DNA of 63,825 bases, the filler included, from Octopus bimaculoides (lineage: Eukaryota), in the NCBI RefSeq assembly GCF_001194135.2. It is 7 parts of 5 records of this genome, joined end to end, with 100 filler letters (N's around TTAATTAATTAA, not from the genome) between each part and the next. Parts side by side here need not be neighbours in the genome. Positions count along the whole stretch, not along the records: positions 52,544 to 60,753 come from NC_069006.1; 6 more parts are not named here. One strand, 5' to 3'. Positions 8,773 through 61,139 of the stretch are shown one piece after another. The position numbers and the translations under genes are program-made. The notes below the pieces were generated by a model. It saw nothing but the letters and a program-made list of their open reading frames with translations. It had not been told where the DNA came from and searched no databases. The first letter of the stretch is position 1. Every line of letters starts with the position of its first letter.

Positions 8773-9400
8773 ATTATAACTACTTGATAGTTTTTATTAG
8801 TATTGTTATGCTTCTTAATCTTAAGTGTGGGTTCAATTATATCTGTAGACAATTTGTCATTTATCTTGTTGATTGTCTGGTGGTTATCATTATTTTCAAA
8901 TTTAATTTTTTTTATGTATACCTTGCCTTATCCAATGCAGAGTTATAAAAGTCCTTAAACATATTAAAGATTTCTTTGTTAGATGAGAGGTAATTAATTC
9001 TAAGTTGTATATTATTAACTAAACATTTGGTAATTATTTTGGGATGATTACTATTATAATTAATATATTTTAGTTTAGAATTAGGTTTGTCATACGGTGC
9101 ATGGTTTCCTGTGTGTAGGTTAAGGTTGATATCTAAAAAAAATTACGGAACTATGCTCGTTTTCTAGACATTTTCAGGCCAAATGTACTAAAGAATCTAT
9201 GAAATTATTTTGCATAATTTTCTGATTTTCTATTGCTTGCAGATTTAATTATATATAATGCATCGTCCCTATATAAACCTCCGGCTACTTCTGGAAATTA
9301 TATATATATATATTAATTATATATATAAATATAATAATAATAATAATAATATTTTATAGTCATTACACGGTGATCGCTTATAAGCTTTAAGCTTATAACA

Positions 9401-9448
<48 letters not shown>

Positions 9449-9500
9449 CATTTACAGAATTGTAAAAATCGACACTGCTTACCAAAAACCATACATATAT
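7600..9500 (-). mobile_element. Penelope-like retroelement remnant (RT + GIY-YIG), interrupted by a SINE and microsatellites
   Basis: Minus-strand motifs: VDFYNSV (~9460), GGLYRDDALY (~9260-9285), FLDINLNL..PYDKPNSKLKYINYNSNHP (~9050-9140), CDCRVKANC..LVYQVTVESEGRYF|YYLGAC..IANHEASFRN..TGLSKFIW..CSLCLNE. Confidence 0.87.
7859..8093 (+). mobile_element. tRNA-derived SINE (family A), full-length, with 15-bp TSD
   Basis: A-box-like TGGCAGAAACGTTAG, B-box-like GAGTTCAAATTCC. AGAAATATCTACCTT duplicated at 7844-7858 and 8094-8108 (partly overlapping the A-rich tail). Confidence 0.9.
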
Positions 9501-9536
9501 ACATATATATAAATATATGCATGCACACACACATAA

Positions 9537-9587
<51 letters not shown>

Positions 9588-10923
9588 CCTATGTATATAC
9601 ATATACACACATATATATATCTTAGACTTATACACGTATATAGATAGATAAACACAAGTATGTATGTATGTATAGATATATGTATGTGTGCGTATGTGTG
9701 CATGTATGTGTGTATATGTGTGCGTGCGTGTGTATACATGTGTGTGTGCGTGTGTATATATGTGTGCATGCGTGTATTATTTAAATGTCAATAATTCCAA
9801 AGTCTTTTTACACACACACACACACACACACAAACAAACAAACACATTTATATATACATATGCATCTTTCTCTCTTCATCTCTCTGTTTGTGTACTTCTG
9901 TCCGTCGGTCTCTCTCCTTTTTTCTCGCTATTTTCCTCTATCTGCATACACACACACACACATACACACACACACACACGCACGCACGCACACGCACACA
10001 CACACACACACAGCACACACACACACACACACACATACANNNNNNNNNNNNNNNNNNNNNNNNNNNNNNNNNNNNNNNNNNNNNNNNNNNNNNNNNNNNN
10101 NNNNNNNNNNNNNNNNNNNNNNNNNNNNNNNNNNNNNNNNNNNNNNNNNNNNNNNNNNNNNNNNNNNNNNNNNNNNNNNNNNNNNNNNNNNNNNNNNNNN
10201 NNNNNNNNNNNNNNNNNNNNNNNNNNNNNNNNNNNNNNNNNNNNNNNNNNNNNNNNNNNNNNNNNNNNNNNNNNNNNNNNNNNNNNNNNNNNNNNNNNNN
10301 NNNNNNNNNNNNNNNNNNNNNNNNNNNNNNNNNNNNNNNNNNNNNNNNNNNNNNNNNNNNNNNNNNNNNNNNNNNNNNNNNNNNNNNNNNNNNNNNNNNN
10401 NNNNNNNNNNNNNNNNNNNNNNNNNNNNNNNNNNNNNNNNNNNNNNNNNNNNNNNNNNNNNNNNNNNNNNNNNNNNNNNNNNNNNNNNNNNNNNNNNNNN
10501 NNNNNNNNNNNNNNNNNNNNNNNNNNNNNNNNNNNNNNNNNNNNNNNNNNNNNNNNNNNNNNNNNNNNNNNNNNNNNNNNNNNNNNNNNNNNNNNNNNNN
10601 NNNNNNNNNNNNNNNNNNNNNNNNNNNNNNNNNNNNNNNNNNNNNNNNNNNNNNNNNNNNNNNNNNNNNNNNNNNNNNNNNNNNNNNNNNNNNNNNNNNN
10701 NNNNNNNNNNNNNNNNNNNNNNNNNNNNNNNNNNNNNNNNNNNNNNNNNNNNNNNNNNNNNNNNNNNNNNNNNNNNNNNNNNNNNNNNNNNNNNNNNNNN
10801 NNNNNNNNNNNNNNNNNNNNNNNNNNNNNNNNNNNNNNNNNNNNNNNNNNNNNNNNNNNNNNNNNNNNNNNNNNNNNNNNNNNNNNNNNNNNNNNNNNNN
10901 NNNNNNNNNNNNNNNNNNNNNNN

Positions 10924-10992
<69 letters not shown>

Positions 10993-11569
10993 TGCACAAA
11001 CACACATACATACACGACTGGCTTCCACAGAATTTTCGTCTACCAAATCCACTCACAAGGCTTTGGTCAGATCGGGGCGATAGCAGAAGACACTTGCTCA
11101 AAGTATCGCACTTCGGGAACGAAATTGAAACCACGAGGTAGCAAAGCGAACTTCTTAACTACACAGCCATTACCTGCGCCTAATAAAACGAAATTAAATT
11201 GTACCAACCGAGAATTGAAATCACGTCGTGGTTTCCACTCCAGAAGAGTGCAATCTTTGTTCATTGACATTGGCCATATAAATGACATATTGAGGTCTAA
11301 GAGATCTGATATATTGTAATGTTATTACCTTTTTATAAGTCCTGAGTATGACTTTAAACTGCATCTAGTAGAGGGTTCCTAGGTCTTCTTTGACCTGGTG
11401 TATGTCAGGATTCCAGCTATGGGTTCACTAGTGTATGAACGATGGGACGTAGAAATACTTAGGTTGATGTCCAAGGGTGCAGTAAGCCCACTAGTTTTGA
11501 GGGAACCCTGGTCTTTATTAAGGTATCCTTCTAGGAGAAGGCTAACCTGTATATAACATGTACTTTTAA

Positions 11570-11657
11570 GGAGTGTGTAACCACCTTTTAGTCACTATTG
11601 CTCCTAGGTTTACTCTGACCTAGGAGCAATAGTGACTAAAAGGTGGTTACACACTCC
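11570..11657. repeat. Perfect 40-bp inverted repeat, 8-nt loop
   Basis: 11570-11609 is the exact reverse complement of 11618-11657; loop TTACTCTG. Confidence 0.97.
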
Positions 11658-12682
11658 AGCAATGTGTTAAATAGCATGTAATCGTCCGAATCAGGGTACG
11701 TTGAAATCATGGGGTTCAGCAGGCTGGGTGTAAACTATTGAGTTAATGGCGAATGTCACGAGACGCTGAGCGGATGAACGAGCAACAGCCAGGATCAACC
11801 AGTTCACTTAGCGAACTACATCTATCATCTGAAGTCATGGCGTGTGAAGATGAAATATTTAATTGGTGCAAGATAAAAATGTCTGACGCTCAGGCCAGAA
11901 ACCCATGCTTCACCATTGCGCGAGCGGGGACATCTTGTGTGGAAGAGTTGCATTGTTCCAGGCAGTCAACTGACTAGAAGACGACGACGACAACAATGAT
12001 GATGATGATGATGAGGTAGTAGTAGTAATAGTAGATAAAGATATAAAGCAAACTTAGATATCGGCAGATGTCTCTAAATGTTGCCAGACGTCGGGAATCG
12101 CCATCGGGTTCCACAACAGCTTCTAAGAAAAGTAAAGAAAAGGAAAGAGACTTGGAAGCAGCTTGCTAGTACAAGTGCAATCAATCGAAGACTCCGCATA
12201 CCGGATGCGGGGTTTTAGCGGGTTGGGGGTAGAGGTATAAGGATAGAATGTGCAGCGTTTCGGGGGTAAGGTTGGGGCTTTGACGGGCATTCTCTCCCGA
12301 CGACCCTTCGCTTCGTTGTTACCAGATGTCACGCAGCAACATTATCAGTTAAGTTAGAGGTCACTAATATTGTCAGCTTACTAAGATGTCACTAGATGTC
12401 ACCAGCAACATTATCAGATCAACATCAGATGTGACCATTAAAACTGCTAGCAATTTTCCTGTCACATGACCTTGCAGTAATCTGATAATATATCTCAGTG
12501 CATTAAATGTAATAAAAAAAAAGTTATAAAAAAAAGTCTACTCGCAGGCAGTGGCCTGATTCTGCAGCACATTCCGCCGCTACCCCTGCCTTAATGAATA
12601 AAGATAGTTATGTTGATATAAATGTCCTCTTACATTAAAAAAGAATGTATACGCAAACGTAAGTACATATACATGTATATCA

Positions 12683-12715
<33 letters not shown>

Positions 12716-12771
12716 CTTCAAAATATAGATACATGTGTGTTTCTGTGTGTGAGCATTTATATATATATATA

Positions 12772-12871
12772 NNNNNNNNNNNNNNNNNNNNNNNNNNNNN
12801 NNNNNNNNNNNNNNNTTAATTAATTAANNNNNNNNNNNNNNNNNNNNNNNNNNNNNNNNNNNNNNNNNNNN
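12772..12871. other. Artificial scaffold spacer N44-TTAATTAATTAA-N44 (12-mers at 12816, 25692, 32628, 52488, 60798, 62648)
   Basis: Identical 12-mer with stops in all six frames, centred in identical 100-bp N blocks six times. Confidence 0.95.
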
Positions 12872-13315
12872 CCAACAGTATGTTTATCCAACATTTCACA
12901 AAACTTTATTAAAACTTCCATCGTTGAATGTTTTAACATCGTAACGTTGTCACCTTGTATAAAATGCCAGCTTCCACATCGTGTTCTCTGATGGAGGGAA
13001 AATGATCAAACTTTAAACCTCTGTTACAGTTTTCTAAAGTTTTTCTGGAATAAGTGAATAGCATCAGATTCAACGGGATAAATTACACCAATATATCAAA
13101 TTTGAAAATTTTCGCTTAATTTTAAAATTTCAGAAGGTGAAATCAAGCAGAAAAGATCCTAATATTTAAAAATGAACTTCATTTGGTCACATTCTATGAG
13201 AATAAATTGGTCAGCTTGTTAACTTTCCAGTCGATCCTCATAATAATAAAAGTTATTATTATTGAACATTTGTTTGTTTTGATACCCAAATTAGAAAACT
13301 TCACCTTGTTTGTAA

Positions 13316-51135: not shown

Positions 51136-52739
51136 GTTAGTATTAAATTGTATCATTTCACTTAGTCATACACATCATCATTTAACATCCACTTTACTAT
51201 GCTTGCATGGGTTAGACAAAATTCTTTGAAGCAAGTTTTCTATGGCCACATGTCCTTTCCTTCACCAACCCTCACTTGTTTCCAAGCAAGGTAGTATTAA
51301 CCTATGACTGGACATATTTTCATGAAAGATTAAAATTGAATGGCACTGCATTTTATTCTATGCTCTAATGACTTATCTTTTGTGTGTGTGTGTATGAATA
51401 TATATAAATGTGTGTGTGTGTGTCATCATCATCAGCATCGTCGTTTAACATCCGCTTTCCATGCTAGCATGGGTTGGACGATTTGACTGAGGACTGGTGA
51501 AACCAGATGGCTACACCAGGCTCCAATCTGATCTGGCAGAGTTTCTACAGCTGGATGCCCTTCCTAATGCCAACCACTCAGAGAGTGTAGTGGGTGCTTT
51601 TACGTGCCACCTGCACGANNNNNNNNNNTAGTGGGTGCTTTTACGTGCCACCTGCACGAAGGCCAGTCAGGCGGTACTGGCAACGGCCACGCTCAAAATG
51701 GTGTATTTTATGTGCCACCCGCACAAGAGCCAGTCCAGGGGCACTGGCAACAATGTGTGTATATATATATATATATATAACCAGTCATTACCTGCAAACA
51801 AGTCTGGCTTGGTAACCTGTACCATGCTTTGGTTAATTGTTTTATGTAGTCACAAACAGACAAAGACACCCTCTTGATTCTCCCACCCCTTGACCCAGTG
51901 GCATTTCCAGTGTATGATATCTAGGGTGAGAGATAGAGATAGAGAGAGAGCTGTACCAGCACTCAGCTGGTGCTTATTTTCATTGAGTAGACTGGAGTAA
52001 CATGAAATTAAGTGCCTTGCTCAAGGATACATGTTGCCCAGTCCAGGAATTGAACCCATTGCATTATGATCGCAAACTGATTATCCAAACAACTAATGTA
52101 TATATGTATGTATATATCTGTCTATCTTTATGTGACTGTCTGTCTATATCCATCCATCTATATATATATATATATATATATAAATATATAGATATCATCA
52201 TCATCATCATTTAACGTCCGCTTTCCATGCTAGCATGGGTTGGACGACTTGACTGAGGACTGGTGAAACCAGATGGCAACACCAGGCTCCAATCTAAATT
52301 TGGCAGAGTTTCTACAGCTGGATGCCCTTCCTAACGCCAACCACTCAGAGAGTGTAGTAGGTGCTTTTACGTGTCACCTGCACGAAGGCCAGTCAGGCGA
52401 TACTGGCAACGGCCACGCTCGAAATGGTGTCTTTTATGTGCCANNNNNNNNNNNNNNNNNNNNNNNNNNNNNNNNNNNNNNNNNNNNTTAATTAATTAAN
52501 NNNNNNNNNNNNNNNNNNNNNNNNNNNNNNNNNNNNNNNNNNNAAAAGCCGGATGGAGACGGGATAAACTACCTGCGTCAACTTGCTATAAAAGCAGGTA
52601 GTAATTTTACCTTGTATTTATTCTTAGTGCAAGTTTTGAAGAGTGCGGTTCCATCTGTGTGCATAATATTACACAATTCATGAATCTTATTTGATACATG
52701 GTTAAGCTTTTTCATCGAATTCGCGATTAAAAGTTTTCA

Positions 52740-52935
52740 TAAGTCATCTCCCTGGGTCCAGCAGACCAAATGGTCAAGCCATTGCCCCGAAGGATGGCGA
52801 GGGGGGTGCGCTGAAACAGCCACTCTGACTTACAGGGTTCGTGCTTGCGGACAGCCATCGCCGACCCGATAGCGCTGAGATGAGAAATATTCCGGGGGCC
52901 AAGAACGCCGGAGAGCTCCACTACCACTCTTTTTT
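52740..52935 (-). mobile_element. CRE-like (RLE) LINE C-terminal fragment
   Basis: LGPRNISHLSAIG..EWLFQRTPLAILRGN resembles the (W/F)L.QRLS.AIQRGN terminus of CRE-type elements. Confidence 0.5.
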
Positions 52936-52974
52936 CTTTCTTTCTCTCTCTATCCCCCCCCCCTCTCTCTCTCT

Positions 52975-53270
52975 TAGGCCGCTTGAATCCTCGGGGAACA
53001 TAGGGTCGCAACAACATTTTTCCAAATGACGCGGTTCTGAGGGATACTCTTCATCCCGGCCCCTGTCATTCCAGCTGCCCTCACCTTTGCGTCAACGCTC
53101 TTGTGTCAAGACTATTTGGGTCGGCCCACTTTTCGCTTCCCCAATGGGTTCCAGTCAAGGTCCTTGGTGACATTTGGTGCAGGCCTTCGTAGCGTGTGGT
53201 GGCCTATCCATCTCCAGAACAACTGTGCGACAGGACAAGACAAGCTCCACTGCCACTGGCTCGATCATAT
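52975..53270 (-). mobile_element. RTE-clade LINE 3' end
   Basis: WRWIGHTLRRP..DWNPLGKRKVGRPK..QNRVIWKNVVATLCS. Confidence 0.75.
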
Positions 53271-53318
53271 TAGTATTATGAAGAGAAACGCATCTAATTA
53301 CGCAATAAAGATATTTTA

Positions 53319-53326
53319 TGACGTCA
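53319..53326. promoter_or_regulatory. CRE palindrome (TGACGTCA) upstream of the nested gene
   Basis: Exact TGACGTCA about 155 bp upstream of ATG 53481; function not shown. Confidence 0.25.
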
Positions 53327-53480
53327 CAACTCATAAATGTAGAAAACGAAAAAAATAATCCTGAAAAATAAAGAACAAAACAAAAATTAAAAGGAATTTT
53401 CGACTTTAACTTTCATTTGCAACTACGTTTTCAAAAAGAAAGCAGTATGAGGAGGAAATACCTGAAACATTTTTCGGGAA

Positions 53481-53729
53481 ATGTTCGTTTCAGTGCTACA
53501 TTGCCAAAATGAAATAATTTACTTGAACGGAAATTGCCGAGCAAAGACTATAAAAGAGTACTTGCGACGAAAATGTCCACTCATAATATCAAAAGTGGTC
53601 GATCTTATCGACACCGTGGGTAAACTTCTTCACCTCAGTTGGATATCGGACATTACAAACGCCAAGATGCTTTTCCAGGATCAGACTCTGTACATACTCG
53701 TTATATTGAAGACAAGGCCAGATTTAAAA
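53481..53729 (+). CDS. CXorf65/C22orf15-like protein (Il2rg/PF15874-type domain), exon 1
   Basis: Open 83 codons MFVSVLHCQNEIIYLNGNCRAKTIKEYLRRKCPLIISKVVDLIDTVGKLLHLSWISDITNAKMLFQDQTLYILVILKTRPDLK end exactly at donor aaa|gtgagt (53730, phase 0). Pattern MF...H..N.....N.NC......Y+R.K..L....+DL....GK resembles the CXorf65/C22orf15 N-terminus (recognised by eye). Confidence 0.7.
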
Positions 53730-53774
53730 GTGAGTGTAATCGATGTTGGGGTTTGGTCGTTGTCTTTCTTTATT

Positions 53775-54140
53775 TGGCTTTTGGAAGGGCTTTAGTCAAG
53801 GGTTTTAGGAAGAACATTAGGCAGGGCTTCAGGAAGGGATTTGGGCAAGGATTTTACGAAAGTCTTTAGGCAGGGTTTTTGGAAAGGCTTTAGGCAAGGG
53901 CCATAAGTATGGACCTTAGGCACGGGATTTTGAGAGGTCATTAGATAGGACTTTATGAAGGGCCTTAGGGAGGTCTGTAGGCAGCGCTTTAGGAAGGGCC
54001 GTAGCAATGGCTTTAGGGAGGTCTTTAGGCAGGGCTTTAGGAAGAAATTTAAGCAAGGGCCATAGGTAAGGGTTTTAGGACGGTGTTTAGGTAGGGCTTT
54101 AGGAAGGGTGTTAAGCAATAGCTTTAGAAAGGTCTTCTGG
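53775..54140. repeat. Degenerate 12-bp-unit minisatellite (AGGGCTTTAGG[C/A])
   Basis: Repeated gggctttaggca / gggctttaggaa; reads as ALPK-type tetrapeptides on the minus strand, with frame shifts. Confidence 0.8.
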
Positions 54141-54339
54141 CATGAACCTCACAATGCCCTATCTTCCATGCTCAGATGGAATTTGTTGAGGCAAATTTTC
54201 CACGACCAGATACCCTTTCTGTCACCAACCCTCATCTGTATCCAAACTTGGTAACATTTTCCCATGGCCAGATCTGGGATCGTAAGTATTCAAGCACTAC
54301 AGGCTTTTTCTCTTTTTGGTTTATTTTGGAACGGAGAAG

Positions 54340-54700
54340 GTTTGTAGCCTAGTTGTTAAGGTCTTGTACTCATGTTTGCAAGATTATGGTTTCAGTTCCT
54401 GTTCTTGAGCAAAGCACTTCATTTCATGTTGCTCTAGTCCACTCAGCTAATGGTTAGGATGTTGCACTCATGACTTCTAGATTGTGGTTTCAATTCCTGG
54501 ACTCAGCGACGCATTGGGTTCTTGAGCAAAACACTTCATTTCATGTTACTCCAGTTCACTCAGCTGTAAGCGAGTTAACCCACGATAGACTGGCGTACTG
54601 TCCAGGAAGAGTGTTGTGATCTCAGATCACTGATACACCATAGAAACCGGGTCACCAACCAGCCCTATTAGCCCTAGGACCTGAGGTAGTAATATCTAGC
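54340..54700 (+). mobile_element. SINE family C, tandem partial copies (another copy at ~1445-1600)
   Basis: tagtggttagg.tgttgcactca..gtggtttc.attcctgg..ttcttgagcaaaacacttcatttcatgtt.ctccagtccactcagct repeated; tRNA-like head. Confidence 0.7.
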
Positions 54701-55491
54701 GGGATTTAGAAAAAGAGGTTGTACTTATGGCCTTTCCCATGCCACTCTGAGACAGGTTAGATCAATACCAAAGTGGTTAACCATTGTCGTTTGTCTCGAA
54801 CAGTTATAAAGTAACTCCTGCAGGACACATCTGAGCAGAGAGGAAGCATTCCAGGGGGGGGGGCTAGAAAAGAAGGGCTGGGCATGTTGGTTTGCGTGGG
54901 ACCTGGAGATGAGAGTAGAAATAATACAGGAGCTGAAATGAGGAGAGACAAGAGTATCAATAGTGCTTGAATGGAGGACGTGGGACCTGCAATCTCTAAG
55001 GAATGGACATGATTGTAATAAGAGTAAAGGTAGAGAGAGGAGACACCATGTCAGAGGGCTGGAATTTGAAATGTGTTATCCCAATCACTTAGTGCCCCTT
55101 TATTATGCACTCCGGGTTGTAGTATACAGCCTTTTCAAAAAGGGTTAAAACATAAGCGAGCAAAGTATTCTCAGGTACGTGACTTGCTGGAGAAGTTTAA
55201 CTAATTATGTTAATTTATTAATTTATGCTGGTAACGCTGATGTTGTTGTGAAAATGTTTTCAGTCATCACCTAATTTGGTGTCAACAATGAACTGATTTT
55301 GTTACAGTAGAATATCCTCAGAGCTGATTCACTGTAGTATGGCATGGGTGGTAAGAAGCTTGCTTTCCAACTTCATGGTTTCAGGTTCAGTCCCACTGTA
55401 TAGCACCTTGGGCAAGTGTCTTCTACTATAGCCTCGGCTCGACCAAAGCCTTCTGAGTGGATTTCGTAGATGGAAACTGAAAGAAACTTGT

Positions 55492-55523
<32 letters not shown>

Positions 55524-56740
55524 TATTTACATATGGTGGAGGTGGTGGTGGTAAGGGTGAGACGCTAATGGTGATGATGATGATGGTCATGATGATGATG
55601 ATAACGACAATAATGATTATAGTGATGGTGGTGGTGATGGTAATTTCGTATACTTTAATTATATCTTCATCATCTTCATCATCTTCATGACAAAAAAAGA
55701 GAACATGTGAGCTGCACTTAACAGAGATGTTTATAACAGTCCAGATTGCTAAACCTTTTACTTAAATTGAAGGCAATGGTCGTTTACGAATTGACACTGA
55801 AAGCGATGTCAAATGACGAAAACATTTTGCAACAATCACACACACATTTCTAGCGACTTACGGAAAGTTTATCCTGGCATATGAAAGGAACCTTGAACGG
55901 CTTTCTGGACATGCCGTCTTGTCTCCCAACAATGACATTACGAAGAACATTAGTGACGCCTTCACTTGACCTGTATCATTTAACGTGTACCAGACACGCC
56001 ATTTCATACAGCCAACTATCCCACGGAGTGTTGATAACATCAATTCAGTTTTTTAAATCTTAAATAGTTCCTTCTATTATTTTTTCAATAAATATGGCAC
56101 TCTAGACCTCGTTTTACACACACACATACATACATACATACATACATACATACATTCATACATACATTATATATATATATATATANNNNNNNNNNNNNNN
56201 NNNNNNNNNNNNNNNNNNNNNNNNNNNNNNNNNNNNNNNNNNNNNNNNNNNNNNNNNNNNNNNNNNNNNNNNNNNNNNNNNNNNNNNNNNNNNNNNNNNN
56301 NNNNNNNNNNNNNNNNNNNNNNNNNNNNNNNNNNNNNNNNNNNNNNNNNNNNNNNNNNNNNNNNNNNNNNNNNNNNNNNNNNNNNNNNNNNNNNNNNNNN
56401 NNNNNNNNNNNNNNNNNNNNNNNNNNNNNNNNNNNNNNNNNNNNNNNNNNNNNNNNNNNNNNNNNNNNNNNNNNNNNNNNNNNNNNNNNNNNNNNNNNNN
56501 NNNNNNNNNNNNNNNNNNNNNNNNNNNNNNNNNNNNNNNNNNNNNNNNNNNNNNNNNNNNNNNNNNNNNNNNNNNNNNNNNNNNNNNNNNNNNNNNNNNN
56601 NNNNNNNNNNNNNNNNNNNNNNNNNNNNNNNNNNNNNNNNNNNNNNNNNNNNNNNNNNNNNNNNNNNNNNNNNNNNNNNNNNNNNNNNNNNNNNNNNNNN
56701 NNNNNNNNNNNNNNNNNNNNNNNNNNNNNNNNNNNNNNNN

Positions 56741-57561
56741 NAAATTTTAGAATCTATTTTTTTTTTCTAGTTAGTTTGTGTTTATTTTCAGATCATTAAA
56801 ATGGAATGTCAAGTTAAGAAAAACGAGCATTTTCGACACCTCCTTCTTTTTGCTTTTAATCAAGGTTCTAAGGCCGCAAAAGCTGCTCGCGACATTTGTG
56901 CTGTGTATGGAGAGGGTGCCATAGCTGAAAGAACTGCTCGTGATTGGTATGCCAAGTTCAAAAATGGAAATTTTGACCTCAGAGACTCACCTCGTTCTGG
57001 CCGTCCAGTTGAGTTCGATGAAGAGCGATTAAACCAACTTTTGCACGAAAATTCTCATCAAACGACAAGAAAATGGAATGCTCCCACACTGCTATAGAGA
57101 AGCATCTGAACTCGATGGGAAAGGTTCAGATGTGTGGAGCATGGGTTCCGCATGCTTTAAGGGACAAGAACAAAAATCAACGAGCCACAATCTCCGCTGG
57201 TTTGCTTGCTCGTCACCGCTTAACTCATGGACACAAGCAACGATTTCTTTACCGAATCGTTACTGGCGACGAAAAATGGTGCTTGTACATCAATATGAAG
57301 CAGCGTAAGGAATGGCTTAGCCCCGGTAAACAAGCGACACCGCGCATGAAACAAGATCTTCATCCGCGTAAAACGATGTTGTGCATATGGTGGGACTGGG
57401 AAGGGATTATCCATTACGAATTGCTTGAACGGAACCAAACGGTCAACGTGAAGCTCTATATTCAACAGATGGAACGACTCAACACGGCTATTCAGGAGAA
57501 AAGACCTAATCGGCAGCATGGAGTTCTGCTGCTGCACGACAACTCCCGCTCTCATATCGCC
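56741..57561 (+). mobile_element. Mariner transposase gene, frameshifted and 3'-truncated
   Basis: ORF 56801-57097 (HTH, RSGRP) and 57073-57615 (WVPHAL, IVTGDEKW, LLLHDN). Small deletion at ~57070; homology stops before the YSPDL / third-Asp motif. Confidence 0.93.
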
Positions 57562-58068
57562 TTTGCCTGTCCAGAGCATTTTCCTAAGTCCTTCCATTCT
57601 TATCTTCAGACTTAGTTAGCCCTTTTTTCATACGTTCTGAGAAATATAAAGCTTTCCTTCTATAAGTCCAAAGTTACACTGGTTTCTGAAGATAAAGACT
57701 GGAAGCGTATATCGTATATGACGCATGGACATCCAGGGAAATATGTCCAGTGTATCAAGTGTGATGCACAGGACAGGCAAATGATTAAACCATTTCTGAA
57801 GGAACAGATAATCTTATTTAGCAGCTATTACCTCTTTAATTGAAACGGAACCGTAATCCGCTACAATTTGAGCTATTATCAAAGAAAATTGCTTGGGTAA
57901 AGAAAAAAATGTTCTCAAAAATGGGGAACCAACGCATGGAAACAATTTCTAAGCCTTATAACTTTTTATTTATTAATTTACTAGCTTCAAAGCCGTATTC
58001 CATGCGGACTCTTTCGTCTAGGTCCTGTGGAGGGCTGTTCTGTAATTTTAATTATTATTTCTTTTCAG

Positions 58069-58242
58069 GATGCCTTCCATATAGTTCCTGTATTGGACAA
58101 TTGGCAAACTCTATACCCAGAATTAGTGAAAAGCATTAAAGCCCCCATTATGATTGGACCTCAACGAGAAATCCTGAAAAGCAAGTTACAGGGAAAGAAA
58201 GCTAAACATGCAGCAGCACGTAGAGACAAGCTGCTTTTTTGA
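58069..58242 (+). CDS. CXorf65/C22orf15-like protein, terminal exon 2
   Basis: Strong acceptor attattatttcttttcag|g, phase 0. DAFHIVPVLDNWQTLYPELVKSIKAPIMIGPQREILKSKLQGKKAKHAAARRDKLLF* (VPVL.N..YPEL plus basic tail, as in this family). AATAAA follows. Confidence 0.7.
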   Translation, partial: DAFHIVPVLDNWQTLYPELVKSIKAPIMIGPQREILKSKLQGKKAKHAAARRDKLLF

Positions 58243-58277
58243 AGTACATACGGCCATTTTGTTTTTAAACGATCATC

Positions 58278-58283
58278 AATAAA
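58278..58283 (+). terminator. Polyadenylation signal of the nested gene
   Basis: AATAAA 35 nt after the TGA stop at 58240-58242. Confidence 0.5.
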
Positions 58284-58639
58284 AGACTATATTAAATGTG
58301 AAAAATAGATGGCCTGTTGTTAGAAGACGATTTGTCCATTCACAATATACACTGTATACACACTCACTCCGTCTCTCTTTCTTTCCCTCTCTCTTATTCT
58401 TCAGTCCTTTCATTATGTCTGTCTCTATCTCTGTCTCTGTCTCTNNNNNNNNNNNNNNNNNNNNNNNNNNNNNNNNNNNNNNNNNNNNNNNNNNNNNNNN
58501 NNNNNNNNNNNNNNNNNNNNNNNNNNNNNNNNNNNNNNNNNNNNGTGATCATCTTTCTTTTTTTTTTCCAGAACTGTCCTAAGGACTGGACATATCCTAT
58601 CTCTCTCCTCTATCTTTTCTCTTGTCAAAGAAAACATTT

Positions 58640-59385
58640 CTCCAGCGTTCGCTATTTTACCTTCGTTCTGGTCTAACGACCGTCCATACAAGCGAGAGGC
58701 TTACCAGAAAGTTAAAGGAAGGCATAATATGTCATATCCGACAAGTAAATAGTAGAACGGATAGGCCTGTCACTGTAATGTCATATGTCAGCAAAGTCAT
58801 GAAATACATTGCATGGTGGAAGCTGATCACGTTTCTTAAGATAATGAGCTTGCTCTCCGACACCCAGCAGGAAGAAGCTGCCTTACCCAGCTTCTGAAGC
58901 ATTATAAATGGGTGTTGAAACAATTAATGAAGCGTTCAAACCTGGATGCGATATATATATCTATCTTGCCTTTCATAAGGTCGATCATGGGATGATATGT
59001 CACAAGCCACGAAGACTCGGCATAGTCAAAAAAACTGCTCAGAAGATCCCACCCATCCTATCTAATGTTGGGTCCATGTACTGAAATAGCTTGAGATTCA
59101 AAAGCCCGCAGCTATTTAGTATCAAGCCAAAAGCATCTGAGAGGTTTACATGGAGTAGTGCTAGATATTTTCAAGAGATAAATTGACCTCCTACTGTCCA
59201 AGGTCCCAGATAAACCTATATCGAGGCAAGAAGCTCAAAAGATGGGGAGCAGTCTTGAACTCCCTCCTTCACCAAAACCCAATCACAAAACAACGGCCAT
59301 TAGAAAGTTGATATAACACTGGCGGTGGTGCCCCAGCTTGGCCACAGCCTTTGGGCTGAAACACATAAAAGAATAAAAGAATATA
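58640..59385 (+). mobile_element. CR1-clade LINE fragment with internal deletion and (AAAAGAAT)n tail
   Basis: KLKEGIIC..RPVTVMSYVSKVM..; RSCLTQLLKHY.WVLKQL..LDAIY..AFHKVDHGMICHK; 3' end aaaagaataaaagaata. Confidence 0.8.
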
Positions 59386-60169
59386 TGNNNNNNNNNNNNN
59401 NNNNNNNNNNNNNNNNNNNNNNNNNNNNNNNNNNNNNNNNNNNNNNNNNNNNNNNNNNNNNNNNNNNNNNNNNNNNNNNNNNNNNNNNNNNNNNNNNNNN
59501 NNNNNNNNNNNNNNNNNNNNNNNNNNNNNNNNNNNNNNNNNNNNNNNNNNNNNNNNNNNNNNNNNNNNNNNNNNNNNNNNNNNNNNNNNNNNNNNNNNNN
59601 NNNNNNNNNNNNNNNNNNNNNNNNNNNNNNNNNNNNNNNNNNNNNNNNNNNNNNNNNNNNNNNNNNNNNNNNNNNNNNNNNNNNNNNNNNNNNNNNNNNN
59701 NNNNNNNNNNNNNNNNNNNNNNNNNNNNNNNNNNNNNNNNNNNNNNNNNNNNNNNNNNNNNNNNNNNNNNNNNNNNNNNNNNNNNNNNNNNNNNNNNNNN
59801 NNNNNNNNNNNNNNNNNNNNNNNNNNNNNNNNNNNNNNNNNNNNNNNNNNNNNNNNNNNNNNNNNNNNNNNNNNNNNNNNNNNNNNNNNNNNNNNNNNNN
59901 NNNNNNNNNNNNNNNNNNNNNNNNNNNNNNNNNNNNNNNNNNNNNNNNNNNNNNNNNNNNNNNNNNNNNNNNNNNNNNNNNNNNNNNNNNNNNNNNNNNN
60001 NNNNNNNNNNNNNNNNNNNNNNNNNNNNNNNNNNNNNNNNNNNNNNNNNNNNNNNNNNNNNTATATATATCATATATATATGATGCATTTATATATAAAT
60101 ATATATCTATCTATCATATATATAATACATACATATTTGTGTGTGTGTGTGTGTATTTCTCTATATGTA

Positions 60170-60360
60170 GATGATGAAATCTGGAAAGTTTTACAGATTT
60201 TTACAGTTCCAGTGATGGCTTGGATCTGTTGTCTTCGAATCAGCTTTCTCCTTTCTGGTTTTGAGAAGCCTAATTTCTCAAGATTGGTACTAAGGCTGTG
60301 TGTTACTTATTCCAGTACCGCAATAATTACAGGTATAAACCTGAACTTGTAATCTGGAGA
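60170..60360 (-). mobile_element. RLE-type (R4/Dong-like) LINE C-terminal fragment
   Basis: PDYKFRFIPVII..TNLEKLGFSK..LIRRQQIQAITGTVKICKTF. Confidence 0.5.
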
Positions 60361-61139
60361 GAATAGAATAGAATAACTGCAGATTTCTCAATAGTTTAGC
60401 GTATGTATGCATGTATGTATGTATGTATGGATGGATGGATGTATGGATGGATGTGTGTGTGTGTGTGTATGTGTGTATGTGTGTGTGTGCCCGCACGCAC
60501 GTGTGTGTGTACGAGCGTATACGTGTGATGAAAGAGCCTTTCCGTGTGCTAGAAATCTCAGCCAAAAAGTCTGTCAGACCACATTCTATCGACTTAAATT
60601 AAATTTCTAGGCCTTGAACACCTGAGATTCCGAATCTGAATAAGTAAAATAAACAAATAATTAAATAAATAGATAAAAATCCTTAAAAGTAAAATCAAAA
60701 TAAAAAAATAAAACCAAAATATTTTTTTCCAAATATTTTCTTTTATGAAATCANNNNNNNNNNNNNNNNNNNNNNNNNNNNNNNNNNNNNNNNNNNNTTA
60801 ATTAATTAANNNNNNNNNNNNNNNNNNNNNNNNNNNNNNNNNNNNNNNNNNNNAAAAATGTGCTTGTAAGATGGTGTACAAGTGGTAGAAGGGAAACTCT
60901 AGATGAAGAAGGGTAGAAAAATAAAATGAAAGCAGATATAGAAAGGAGGGAGAGAAGAACAGGAAGTAGAAAACAAAAAGCAGAAAGACAAATGGAATAG
61001 AGAGGGTAGGTAACACCCTATTTTGGGTCCACCAAAATAGACTTGTTTTATCTTAGCTGCCATCCATTTTTTATATACTGGACTTCATTTTACCCCAGTG
61101 TCACTTTGATGGTATGCACTGCACTCTCACTCAGTTAGA

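What the first reader, a model, noticed from the sequence alone, without database searches (positions are those of the whole stretch)
53481..58283. Intact CXorf65/C22orf15-like gene nested on the same strand inside a STAMBP intron
Seen: 83 open codons ending at a phase-0 GTGAGT donor, and a phase-0 terminal exon with a strong acceptor, stop and AATAAA; spliced product 140 aa with no disablements. The ORF track misses it because it is split. Known: the MF..H..N...N.NC..Y.R.K..DL...GK pattern typifies the poorly characterised CXorf65/C22orf15 (Il2rg, PF15874) family. Inference: STAMBP has no JAMM exons yet, so its intron spans this gene. Same-strand nesting with a poly(A) site is uncommon and could truncate STAMBP transcripts. 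The upstream CRE hints at testis or ciliated-cell expression.
Basis: partly seen in the sequence, partly recalled or inferred. Interest (0 to 1): 0.72.

Follow-up and report, generated by a model that had tools for sequence, protein, structure and literature searches.

The report
Annotated octopus CXorf65-homolog gene, not nested

Summary
Observation confirmed. Exon 1 (53481-53729, 83 codons, GTGAGT donor) and exon 2 (58069-58242, strong acceptor, TGA, AATAAA at 58278) splice in phase 0 to a 140-aa product. That product is 100% identical to the NCBI protein 'uncharacterized protein CXorf65 homolog [Octopus bimaculoides]'. It passes Pfam PF15874 (38.9 bits, cut-off 27). The assembly gap (56186-56741) lies inside the intron. 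Family alignments and the Pfam match run without a break across the junction, so no coding exon is missing. Exon 1 is under purifying selection (dN/dS about 0.14).

The STAMBP nesting is not supported. No JAB or USP8_dimer exon lies in the piece or within 10 kb either side on the chromosome-scale assembly. No spanning gene is listed there, and four lophotrochozoan orthologues have other neighbours. I could not locate the octopus STAMBP gene itself.

New details:
- The predicted fold is ubiquitin-like (beta-grasp) with no di-glycine end.
- The perfect CRE at 53319 sits in a block as conserved as the exon.
- Octopus lacks all the conserved phase-1 introns of the family and has one intron at a different place.
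- A paralogous first exon lies 6.5 kb upstream.

Function is still unknown. Low interest; already known.

The parts
53280..53355 (+). Conserved promoter-proximal block holding a perfect palindromic CRE (TGACGTCA, 53319-53326), 155 nt upstream of the ATG
   Evidence: The CRE is the only copy in the window, against 0.03 expected. The block is 89% identical to an Octopus-like Logan contig (L004), against 66-70% for neighbouring non-coding DNA and 87% for the exon.
53481..53729 (+). Coding exon 1 (83 codons): most of the PF15874 domain, ending at the AAA|GTGAGT donor
   Evidence: dN/dS is 0.14 against L004 and 0.15 against the paralogous exon E1a.
53730..58068 (+). Single intron (phase 0, about 4.3 kb including an estimated gap), filled with repeats
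   Evidence: Holds a 12-nt-based tandem array at 53776-54118, interspersed repeat copies near 54340-54600 and 55330-55485, and microsatellites.
56186..56741 (.). Assembly gap (556 N) inside the intron
   Evidence: The same gap is present in GCA_001194135.2. The family alignment shows no missing residues at the junction.
56801..57615 (+). Mariner/Mos1-like transposase pseudogene in the intron, frameshifted and truncated; not part of the gene product
   Evidence: HTH_48 at 1.1e-20 in one frame and Transposase_1 at 3.2e-24 in another. Two overlapping ORFs, 56801-57097 and 57073-57615.
58069..58242 (+). Coding exon 2 (57 codons plus TGA): last beta strand of the domain, the conserved PLL..WEK.YP.L motif, a helix and a basic tail
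   Evidence: P90, L92 and P100 are nearly invariant in the family.
58278..58283 (+). AATAAA poly(A) signal 36 nt after the stop

Best explanation
This is the Octopus bimaculoides orthologue of the uncharacterised metazoan CXorf65 gene (Pfam PF15874, misleadingly named 'Il2rg'). It lies on chromosome CM046626.1 at about 20,264,793-20,269,554 and is already annotated with exactly this product.

Shown:
- Two coding exons joined across a repeat-filled intron of about 4.3 kb.
- The protein sequence is conserved and under purifying selection.
- A conserved upstream block carries a perfect CRE.

Predicted: residues 1-90 form a ubiquitin-like beta-grasp domain whose last strand is encoded by exon 2. 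Short helices follow, carrying the family motif (VPVLDNWQTLYPEL), then a disordered Lys/Arg-rich tail. There is no C-terminal Gly-Gly.

Inferred mechanism (low confidence): a small ubiquitin-like adaptor that is not conjugated. It would bind a partner through its beta-grasp surface and use the basic tail for a second, electrostatic contact. It would be transcribed from a CREB/CREM-type promoter, most plausibly in male germ cells.

The gene stands on its own as far as can be seen; it is not shown to be nested in STAMBP.

The confidence given (0.85) is for the identity and structure of the gene and for the absence of support for nesting. The adaptor mechanism and the tissue I put at about 0.3.
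For: Identity:
- 100% match to the NCBI 'CXorf65 homolog [Octopus bimaculoides]'.
- The piece is 100% identical to GCA_001194135.2 CM046626.1.
- PF15874 at 38.9 bits against a cut-off of 27.
- 22 relatives found by exhaustive phmmer and 54 by profile search, named CXorf65 homolog in molluscs, a nemertean, Lepidoptera and a shark.

Junction:
- Continuous alignment across residues 83/84, with the conserved motif encoded by exon 2.
- In the AlphaFold model, strand 85-90 completes the sheet at pLDDT 86-89.

Selection: dN/dS 0.14-0.15 with dS 0.48-0.92.

Fold: model pLDDT 82.7, pTM 0.74. All 50 listed Foldseek PDB matches are ubiquitin-fold proteins or domains, almost all ubiquitin, SUMO or NEDD8 (the exceptions are FAT10, the parkin Ubl and a FERM domain). 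Probability 0.99-1.00, TM about 0.6 when normalised to the target.

Promoter: unique CRE in a block conserved like coding sequence.

Tissue hint: human CXorf65 sits among spermatid-type genes lost in non-obstructive azoospermia (PMC8875138).
Against: - No expression or junction reads could be examined here.
- The fold is a prediction from a 21-sequence alignment. Foldseek E-values are only about 3e-3, and no family member has a solved structure.
- No functional study of the family was found, so the adaptor mechanism and the tissue are inference.
- The gene structure is atypical for the family: none of the conserved introns is present.
- Scaffolding across the N gap could not be verified.
Confidence: 0.85

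Rival explanations
1. One reading: the gene sits on the same strand inside an intron of STAMBP, and its poly(A) site could truncate STAMBP transcripts.
For: Cephalopod introns can be very long, and the flanks are full of N gaps. I viewed only 10 kb each side and could not fetch the octopus STAMBP gene.
Against: - The window was joined from unrelated pieces (the scan's note).
- No JAB or USP8_dimer in any frame of the piece.
- No AMSH-family tblastn hit in 24.7 kb.
- No spanning gene is listed for the locus.
- Orthologues in four other lophotrochozoans have unrelated neighbours: URB1-like, TMEM138, TULP/WDR35-like, catalase, WD40, calponin.
Confidence: 0.06
2. The model is incomplete or mis-joined because of gaps. 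Either a coding exon hides in the 556-N gap, or the upstream paralogous exon (E1a) belongs to a separate tandem gene whose own last exon hides in the 2517-N gap just before the piece. In the second case RefSeq isoform X1 would be an artefact.
For: Several gaps surround the locus. Similarity between E1a and exon 1 is limited to the exon and about 35 nt beyond it, so nothing shows whether the duplication unit was an exon or a gene. Isoform X1 is not on record in the newer annotation.
Against: Against a hidden exon in the intron gap: the family alignment and the Pfam profile show no missing residues at the junction, and the model's sheet is complete. For the tandem-gene variant there is no direct evidence against it.
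Confidence: 0.15
3. A decaying pseudogene or retro-copy that only looks intact.
For: All ancestral introns are absent, as in processed copies. The protein is only 22-34% identical to other lophotrochozoan orthologues.
Against: - dN/dS is 0.14 over dS 0.48 against a related species, and 0.15 against the paralogous exon.
- The ORF is intact, the nearly invariant family residues are kept, and the promoter block is conserved.
- No other cephalopod copy was found that could serve as the working gene.
Confidence: 0.03

Closest known systems
Human CXorf65 and C22orf15 (Pfam PF15874 'Il2rg'; uncharacterised)
   Same: N-terminal domain starting at Met1 with the family's near-invariant residues (N16, C19, C32, D41-L42, D44, G47, Y71, P90, L92, P100). 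Small size and a basic tail. HMM score above the curated cut-off. NCBI names the octopus protein a CXorf65 homolog.
   Different: Only about 24% identical to a vertebrate (shark) CXorf65 homolog. The gene has 2 coding exons rather than 4-8, and none of the conserved phase-1 introns. I did not test whether it is closer to CXorf65 or to C22orf15. From my own knowledge, the Pfam name reflects the human gene's position next to IL2RG, not any receptor function.
Ubiquitin, SUMO, NEDD8 and ubiquitin-like (beta-grasp) domains
   Same: Predicted beta-beta-alpha-beta-(alpha)-beta-beta topology. The best structural matches are ubiquitin, SUMO and NEDD8.
   Different: No detectable sequence similarity (8-22% identity in the structural alignments). 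No C-terminal Gly-Gly, so it is not a conjugatable modifier. It has an extra helical extension and a basic tail.
Orthologues in Haliotis rufescens, Pomacea canaliculata, Mactra antiquata and Lineus longissimus
   Same: Same family, length and motifs. A single copy was found per genome.
   Different: Those genes keep phase-1 introns after codons 8, 37 and 77/78 (plus about 103 and about 120 in molluscs). Octopus has one phase-0 intron after codon 83. The tail-to-tail URB1-like neighbour of the gastropod genes was not seen within 10 kb in octopus.
CRE-driven (CREB/CREM) promoters, such as those of post-meiotic spermatid genes
   Same: A perfect TGACGTCA close to the start of the gene, in a conserved block.
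   Different: No binding, transcription start or expression data. The parallel is drawn from general knowledge only.

Membership tests
PF15874 (CXorf65/C22orf15, 'Il2rg') | Profile-HMM score at or above Pfam's gathering cut-off | tested here: met
   38.9 bits against 27, E=1.1e-9, residues 7-94 to profile 1-90 of 92.
PF15874 (CXorf65/C22orf15, 'Il2rg') | Domain at the extreme N-terminus with the family's near-invariant residues, followed by the PLL..WEK.YP.L motif | tested here: met
   N16, C19, C32, D41, L42, D44, G47, Y71, P90, L92 and P100 are all present in the octopus protein.
PF15874 (CXorf65/C22orf15, 'Il2rg') | Nearest named relatives are CXorf65 homologues; small protein (about 120-200 aa) with a basic tail | tested here: met
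   The tail reads KSKLQGKKAKHAAARRDKLLF.
PF15874 (CXorf65/C22orf15, 'Il2rg') | Conserved gene structure: phase-1 introns after codons 8, 37 and 77/78 | tested here: not met
   Present in Haliotis, Pomacea, Lineus and Mactra; in the shark the tblastn exon boundaries fall at the matching places, with the third near codon 79. Octopus has only a phase-0 intron after codon 83. This concerns gene structure and does not affect protein-family membership.
PF15874 (CXorf65/C22orf15, 'Il2rg') | Assignment to the CXorf65 rather than the C22orf15 branch | not tested
   No vertebrate C22orf15 sequence was retrieved. Only a shark CXorf65 homolog was compared.
Ubiquitin-like beta-grasp fold | Beta-grasp topology with structural matches to ubiquitin-like proteins | tested here: met
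   At prediction level only: pLDDT 82.7; all 50 listed matches have the ubiquitin fold, almost all ubiquitin/SUMO/NEDD8, probability 0.99-1.00, target-normalised TM about 0.6, E about 3e-3.
Conjugatable ubiquitin-like modifiers | C-terminal (or processed) Gly-Gly | tested here: not met
   The protein ends ...RRDKLLF and has no GG anywhere after the domain.
Gene nested in a STAMBP intron | STAMBP (USP8_dimer / JAB-MPN) exons on both sides on the same strand | tested here: not met
   None in the piece or within 10 kb each side. No spanning gene is listed. Beyond 10 kb this is not testable with these tools.
CRE-regulated promoter | Full palindromic CRE near the start, conserved in a relative | tested here: met
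   Factor binding and expression are not testable here.

The most novel reading that the evidence does not exclude
The octopus CXorf65 locus may not be the ancestral gene in place. It could descend from a processed (retro-transposed) copy that lost all four or five ancient phase-1 introns at once. It would then have acquired a new phase-0 intron six codons downstream of the old third one, later swollen by transposons. Finally it would have duplicated its first exon, so that two diverged ubiquitin-like domains (75% identical) can be spliced to one shared C-terminal exon from different promoters, only one of which carries the CRE.
Probability: 0.25. Interest if true: 0.4.

Novelty: already known. 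Interest (0 to 1): 0.17.

Why it matters
As reported, the finding matters little. The gene is an already annotated member of a known, though uncharacterised, family.

The side results are modestly useful:
- PF15874 appears to be a ubiquitin-like fold with a misleading name.
- A conserved CRE gives a testable handle on its regulation.
- The octopus gene is a clear case of wholesale loss of ancient introns, with one intron at a new position and a duplicated first exon.

Tried and rejected
- The bacterial promoter/terminator scan is irrelevant to a eukaryote and was ignored.
I redid it with six-frame translations, X at each stop.
It is still valid as a family probe for tblastn. The homologue list showed only 120 vertebrate rows, so the octopus STAMBP was not retrieved and its position could not be looked up.
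- Isoform X1 (P0002) is not on record for a contig look-up.
- tblastx of the octopus flanks against the gastropod loci gave only low-complexity matches and no URB1 exon within 10 kb.
- PDB sequence searches, with the single protein and with the profile, gave no relative.
- Rfam and tRNA scans of the piece found nothing.
- No RFX X-box lies upstream, so the ciliated-cell idea has no motif support.
- Self-comparison of the locus showed no duplication beyond the exon.
- The open frame at the very start of the piece (52546-52598, ending at a GTAGTA) is too short to test and matched nothing.
Full report
**1. What the piece is.**
The usable piece (window 52544-60753) is 100% identical to Octopus bimaculoides assembly GCA_001194135.2, chromosome CM046626.1. 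In the fetched locus L001 it corresponds to positions 9064-17273. It is bounded by N gaps: 2517 N upstream and 1472 N downstream. It contains three internal gaps, at 56186-56741, 58445-58544 and 59388-60061.

**2.
- The ATG is at 53481, with an in-frame TGA 18 nt upstream.
- There are 83 open codons, then AAA|GTGAGT at 53730.
- The acceptor ...tttcttttcag|G gives an exon start at 58069.
- Then come 57 codons and TGA at 58240-58242.
- AATAAA lies at 58278-58283.
- The only other in-frame acceptors nearby (57985, 58033) lack a polypyrimidine tract.

The spliced 140-aa product is identical, residue for residue, to the NCBI protein 'uncharacterized protein CXorf65 homolog [Octopus bimaculoides]' (P0001). 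It matches Pfam PF15874 'Il2rg' at 38.9 bits (cut-off 27, E=1.1e-9).

**3. The gap, tested first.**
The 556-N gap lies inside the intron, so no reading frame crosses it. The real question is whether a coding exon is hidden there, or whether the two exons belong together. Five results bear on this:
- The Pfam match runs without a gap from residue 7 to 94 (profile 1-90 of 92). It scores higher with exon 2 than without (38.9 against 37.0 bits).
- An exhaustive phmmer search of 1.84 billion representatives found 22 relatives. Nearly all align from about residue 1 to residues 103-132, so the alignments run across 83/84.
- In the alignment of 21 sequences, the exon-2 segment VPVLDNWQTLYPEL fits the family consensus PLL..WEK.YP.L. 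P90, L92 and P100 are nearly invariant, and octopus has no deletion at the junction.
- In the AlphaFold2 model, strand 85-90, encoded by exon 2, completes the sheet at pLDDT 86-89.
- The left flank of the gap is a (TACA)13/(TA)n microsatellite, an ordinary cause of an assembly break.

A missing coding exon is therefore very unlikely. Order and orientation across the gap rest on scaffolding that I could not verify.

**4. The gene is constrained.**
A 965-nt Logan contig from an Octopus-like sample (L004) carries the orthologous exon 1 with the same GTGAGT donor. Against it, dN/dS is 0.14 with dS 0.48. This argues against a pseudogene.

**5. Surroundings.**
Six-frame Pfam scans of every non-N stretch of the piece found only three things:
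- Il2rg (exon 1).
- HTH_48 (1.1e-20).
- Transposase_1 (3.2e-24).

The last two lie in different frames at 56801-57615. Together they are a frameshifted, truncated mariner/Mos1-like transposase inside the intron.

The intron also holds a tandem array based on a 12-nt unit (53776-54118), interspersed repeat copies, and microsatellites. There is no Rfam family and no tRNA in the piece.

**6. STAMBP nesting.**
The tests I could run all came out negative:
- No JAB or USP8_dimer domain in any frame of the piece.
- No tblastn hit better than E=2.6 for an AMSH-family probe in the 24.7-kb locus.
- The gene table for L001 lists only the CXorf65 homolog. The same tool does list genes that run over locus ends.
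- Orthologue loci in four other lophotrochozoans have unrelated neighbours:

| Species | Neighbours |
|---|---|
| Haliotis | URB1-like (Npa1/NopRA1) tail-to-tail; TMEM138 upstream |
| Pomacea | URB1-like tail-to-tail |
| Lineus | TULP/WDR35-like and catalase |
| Mactra | WD40 and calponin genes |

I could not fetch the octopus STAMBP gene to place it: the homologue list was filled by 120 vertebrate rows. A host intron longer than the 25 kb viewed therefore remains formally possible but is unsupported.

**7. What the protein looks like.**
The model built from the 21-sequence alignment has mean pLDDT 82.7 and pTM 0.74. Its elements are:
- strands 2-7 and 11-16;
- helix 21-31;
- strand 39-44;
- short helix 61-64;
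- strands 70-78 and 85-90;
- helices 95-98, 100-106 and 113-124;
- a disordered tail, 126-140.

All 50 listed Foldseek PDB matches are ubiquitin-fold proteins or domains. Almost all are ubiquitin, SUMO or NEDD8; the exceptions are FAT10, the parkin Ubl and a FERM domain. Probabilities are 0.99-1.00, target-normalised TM is about 0.6, RMSD is mostly 3.2-4.3 A over about 80 columns, and E-values are about 3e-3.

No family member has a solved structure detectable by sequence. The protein ends ...RRDKLLF with no Gly-Gly, so it is not a conjugatable modifier.

My working mechanism is inference, at roughly 30% confidence. I propose a small ubiquitin-like adaptor that docks on a partner through the beta-grasp face and the conserved helical motif. 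The Lys/Arg tail would add an electrostatic contact.

**8. Regulation.**
TGACGTCA at 53319-53326 is the only copy in the window, against 0.03 expected. It lies 155 nt upstream of the ATG. The block 53280-53355 is 89% identical to L004, as conserved as the exon (87%). Neighbouring non-coding DNA is 66-70% identical. This supports a functional promoter element.

Tissue is not established:
- Human CXorf65 is listed among spermatid-type genes depleted in non-obstructive azoospermia (PMC8875138).
- C22orf15 appears in a gene set higher in bronchial epithelium than in carcinoma in situ (PMC2820080).
- No RFX X-box lies upstream.
- No functional study of the family was found.

**9.
Exact exon reconstruction gives the following:

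| Species | Introns |
|---|---|
| Haliotis, Pomacea, Lineus, Mactra | Phase 1 after codons 8, 37 and 77/78 |
| Molluscs, in addition | About 103 and about 120 |
| Octopus | A single phase-0 intron after codon 83 |

The shark CXorf65 homolog shares the first two introns and has others near codons 79 and 101, so these introns are ancient. Octopus has none of them. Residue numbering is the same up to the invariant Y71. Possible explanations are loss of all old introns through a processed copy followed by gain of a new intron, or loss plus a large slide. I cannot decide between them.

**10. A second first exon.**
A paralogous exon, E1a, lies 6.5 kb upstream, outside the piece at L001 3481-3735.
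- It is 75% identical to exon 1 in protein and 79% in DNA.
- It has its own ATG and GTGAGT donor.
- The similarity is confined to the exon and about 35 nt beyond it.
- dN/dS between the two exons is 0.15.

RefSeq isoform X1 (XP_014769096.1, P0002) joins E1a to the same terminal exon. A 2517-N gap lies between E1a and the piece. So I cannot tell 'alternative first exons' from 'a tandem gene whose last exon is hidden in the gap'. E1a has no full CRE upstream.

**11. Verdict.**
The gene is already annotated, so it is not new. The nesting claim that gave the finding its score is unsupported and probably an artefact of the joined window. Interest is low. The intron turnover, the duplicated first exon, the conserved CRE and the predicted ubiquitin-like fold are minor points worth recording.

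Noticed in passing
L001 3481-3735 (6.5 kb upstream of window 53481, outside the piece): A paralogous copy of coding exon 1 (75% aa and 79% nt identity, own ATG and GTGAGT donor, dN/dS 0.15). RefSeq isoform X1 splices it to the same last exon. A 2517-N gap in between leaves open whether it is an alternative first exon or part of a separate tandem gene.
   Followed up: partly
window 53729/58069; L002, L003, L006, L007, L008: The octopus gene lacks all the ancient phase-1 introns of the family (after codons 8, 37, 77/78 and about 103), which are shared by gastropods, a bivalve, a nemertean and a shark. It has one phase-0 intron after codon 83 instead.
   Followed up: partly
window 56801-57615 (+): A mariner/Mos1-like transposase pseudogene in the intron: HTH_48 and Transposase_1 in different frames, truncated within the DDE domain.
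   Followed up: yes
window 53280-53355: The non-coding block around the CRE is as conserved against an Octopus-like Logan contig (89%) as the coding exon (87%). Flanking non-coding DNA is 66-70% identical.
   Followed up: yes
L002 17722-25619 and L003 16234-26871 (minus strand): In both gastropods the CXorf65 homolog lies tail-to-tail with a URB1-like (Npa1/NopRA1) gene; in Pomacea the two overlap. Haliotis has the cilium gene TMEM138 upstream. No URB1 exon was seen within 10 kb downstream in octopus.
   Followed up: partly
window 53776-54118: An intronic tandem array built on a 12-nt unit (GGCTTTAGGAAG, about 27 copies, 62% matches). It is also present, with length differences, in the related Logan contig.
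   Followed up: no
window 54340-54600 and 55330-55485; L001 961-1115: Copies of short interspersed repeats in the intron: two adjacent copies sharing a 48-nt core at 92% identity, and another family with an 81% copy 9 kb upstream. ARAGORN finds no tRNA-like head.
   Followed up: partly
window 52546-52598 (+): Directly after the upstream N gap, an open frame (KPDGDGINYLRQLAIKAG) runs into a GTAGTA. It could be the cut-off end of an exon or chance. It is too short to test and had no Pfam or AMSH-family match.
   Followed up: partly
Pfam PF15874: The family name 'Putative Interleukin 2 receptor, gamma chain' looks like a misnomer. Members are small cytosolic-type proteins predicted to have a ubiquitin-like fold. 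From my own knowledge, human CXorf65 merely lies next to IL2RG.
   Followed up: partly
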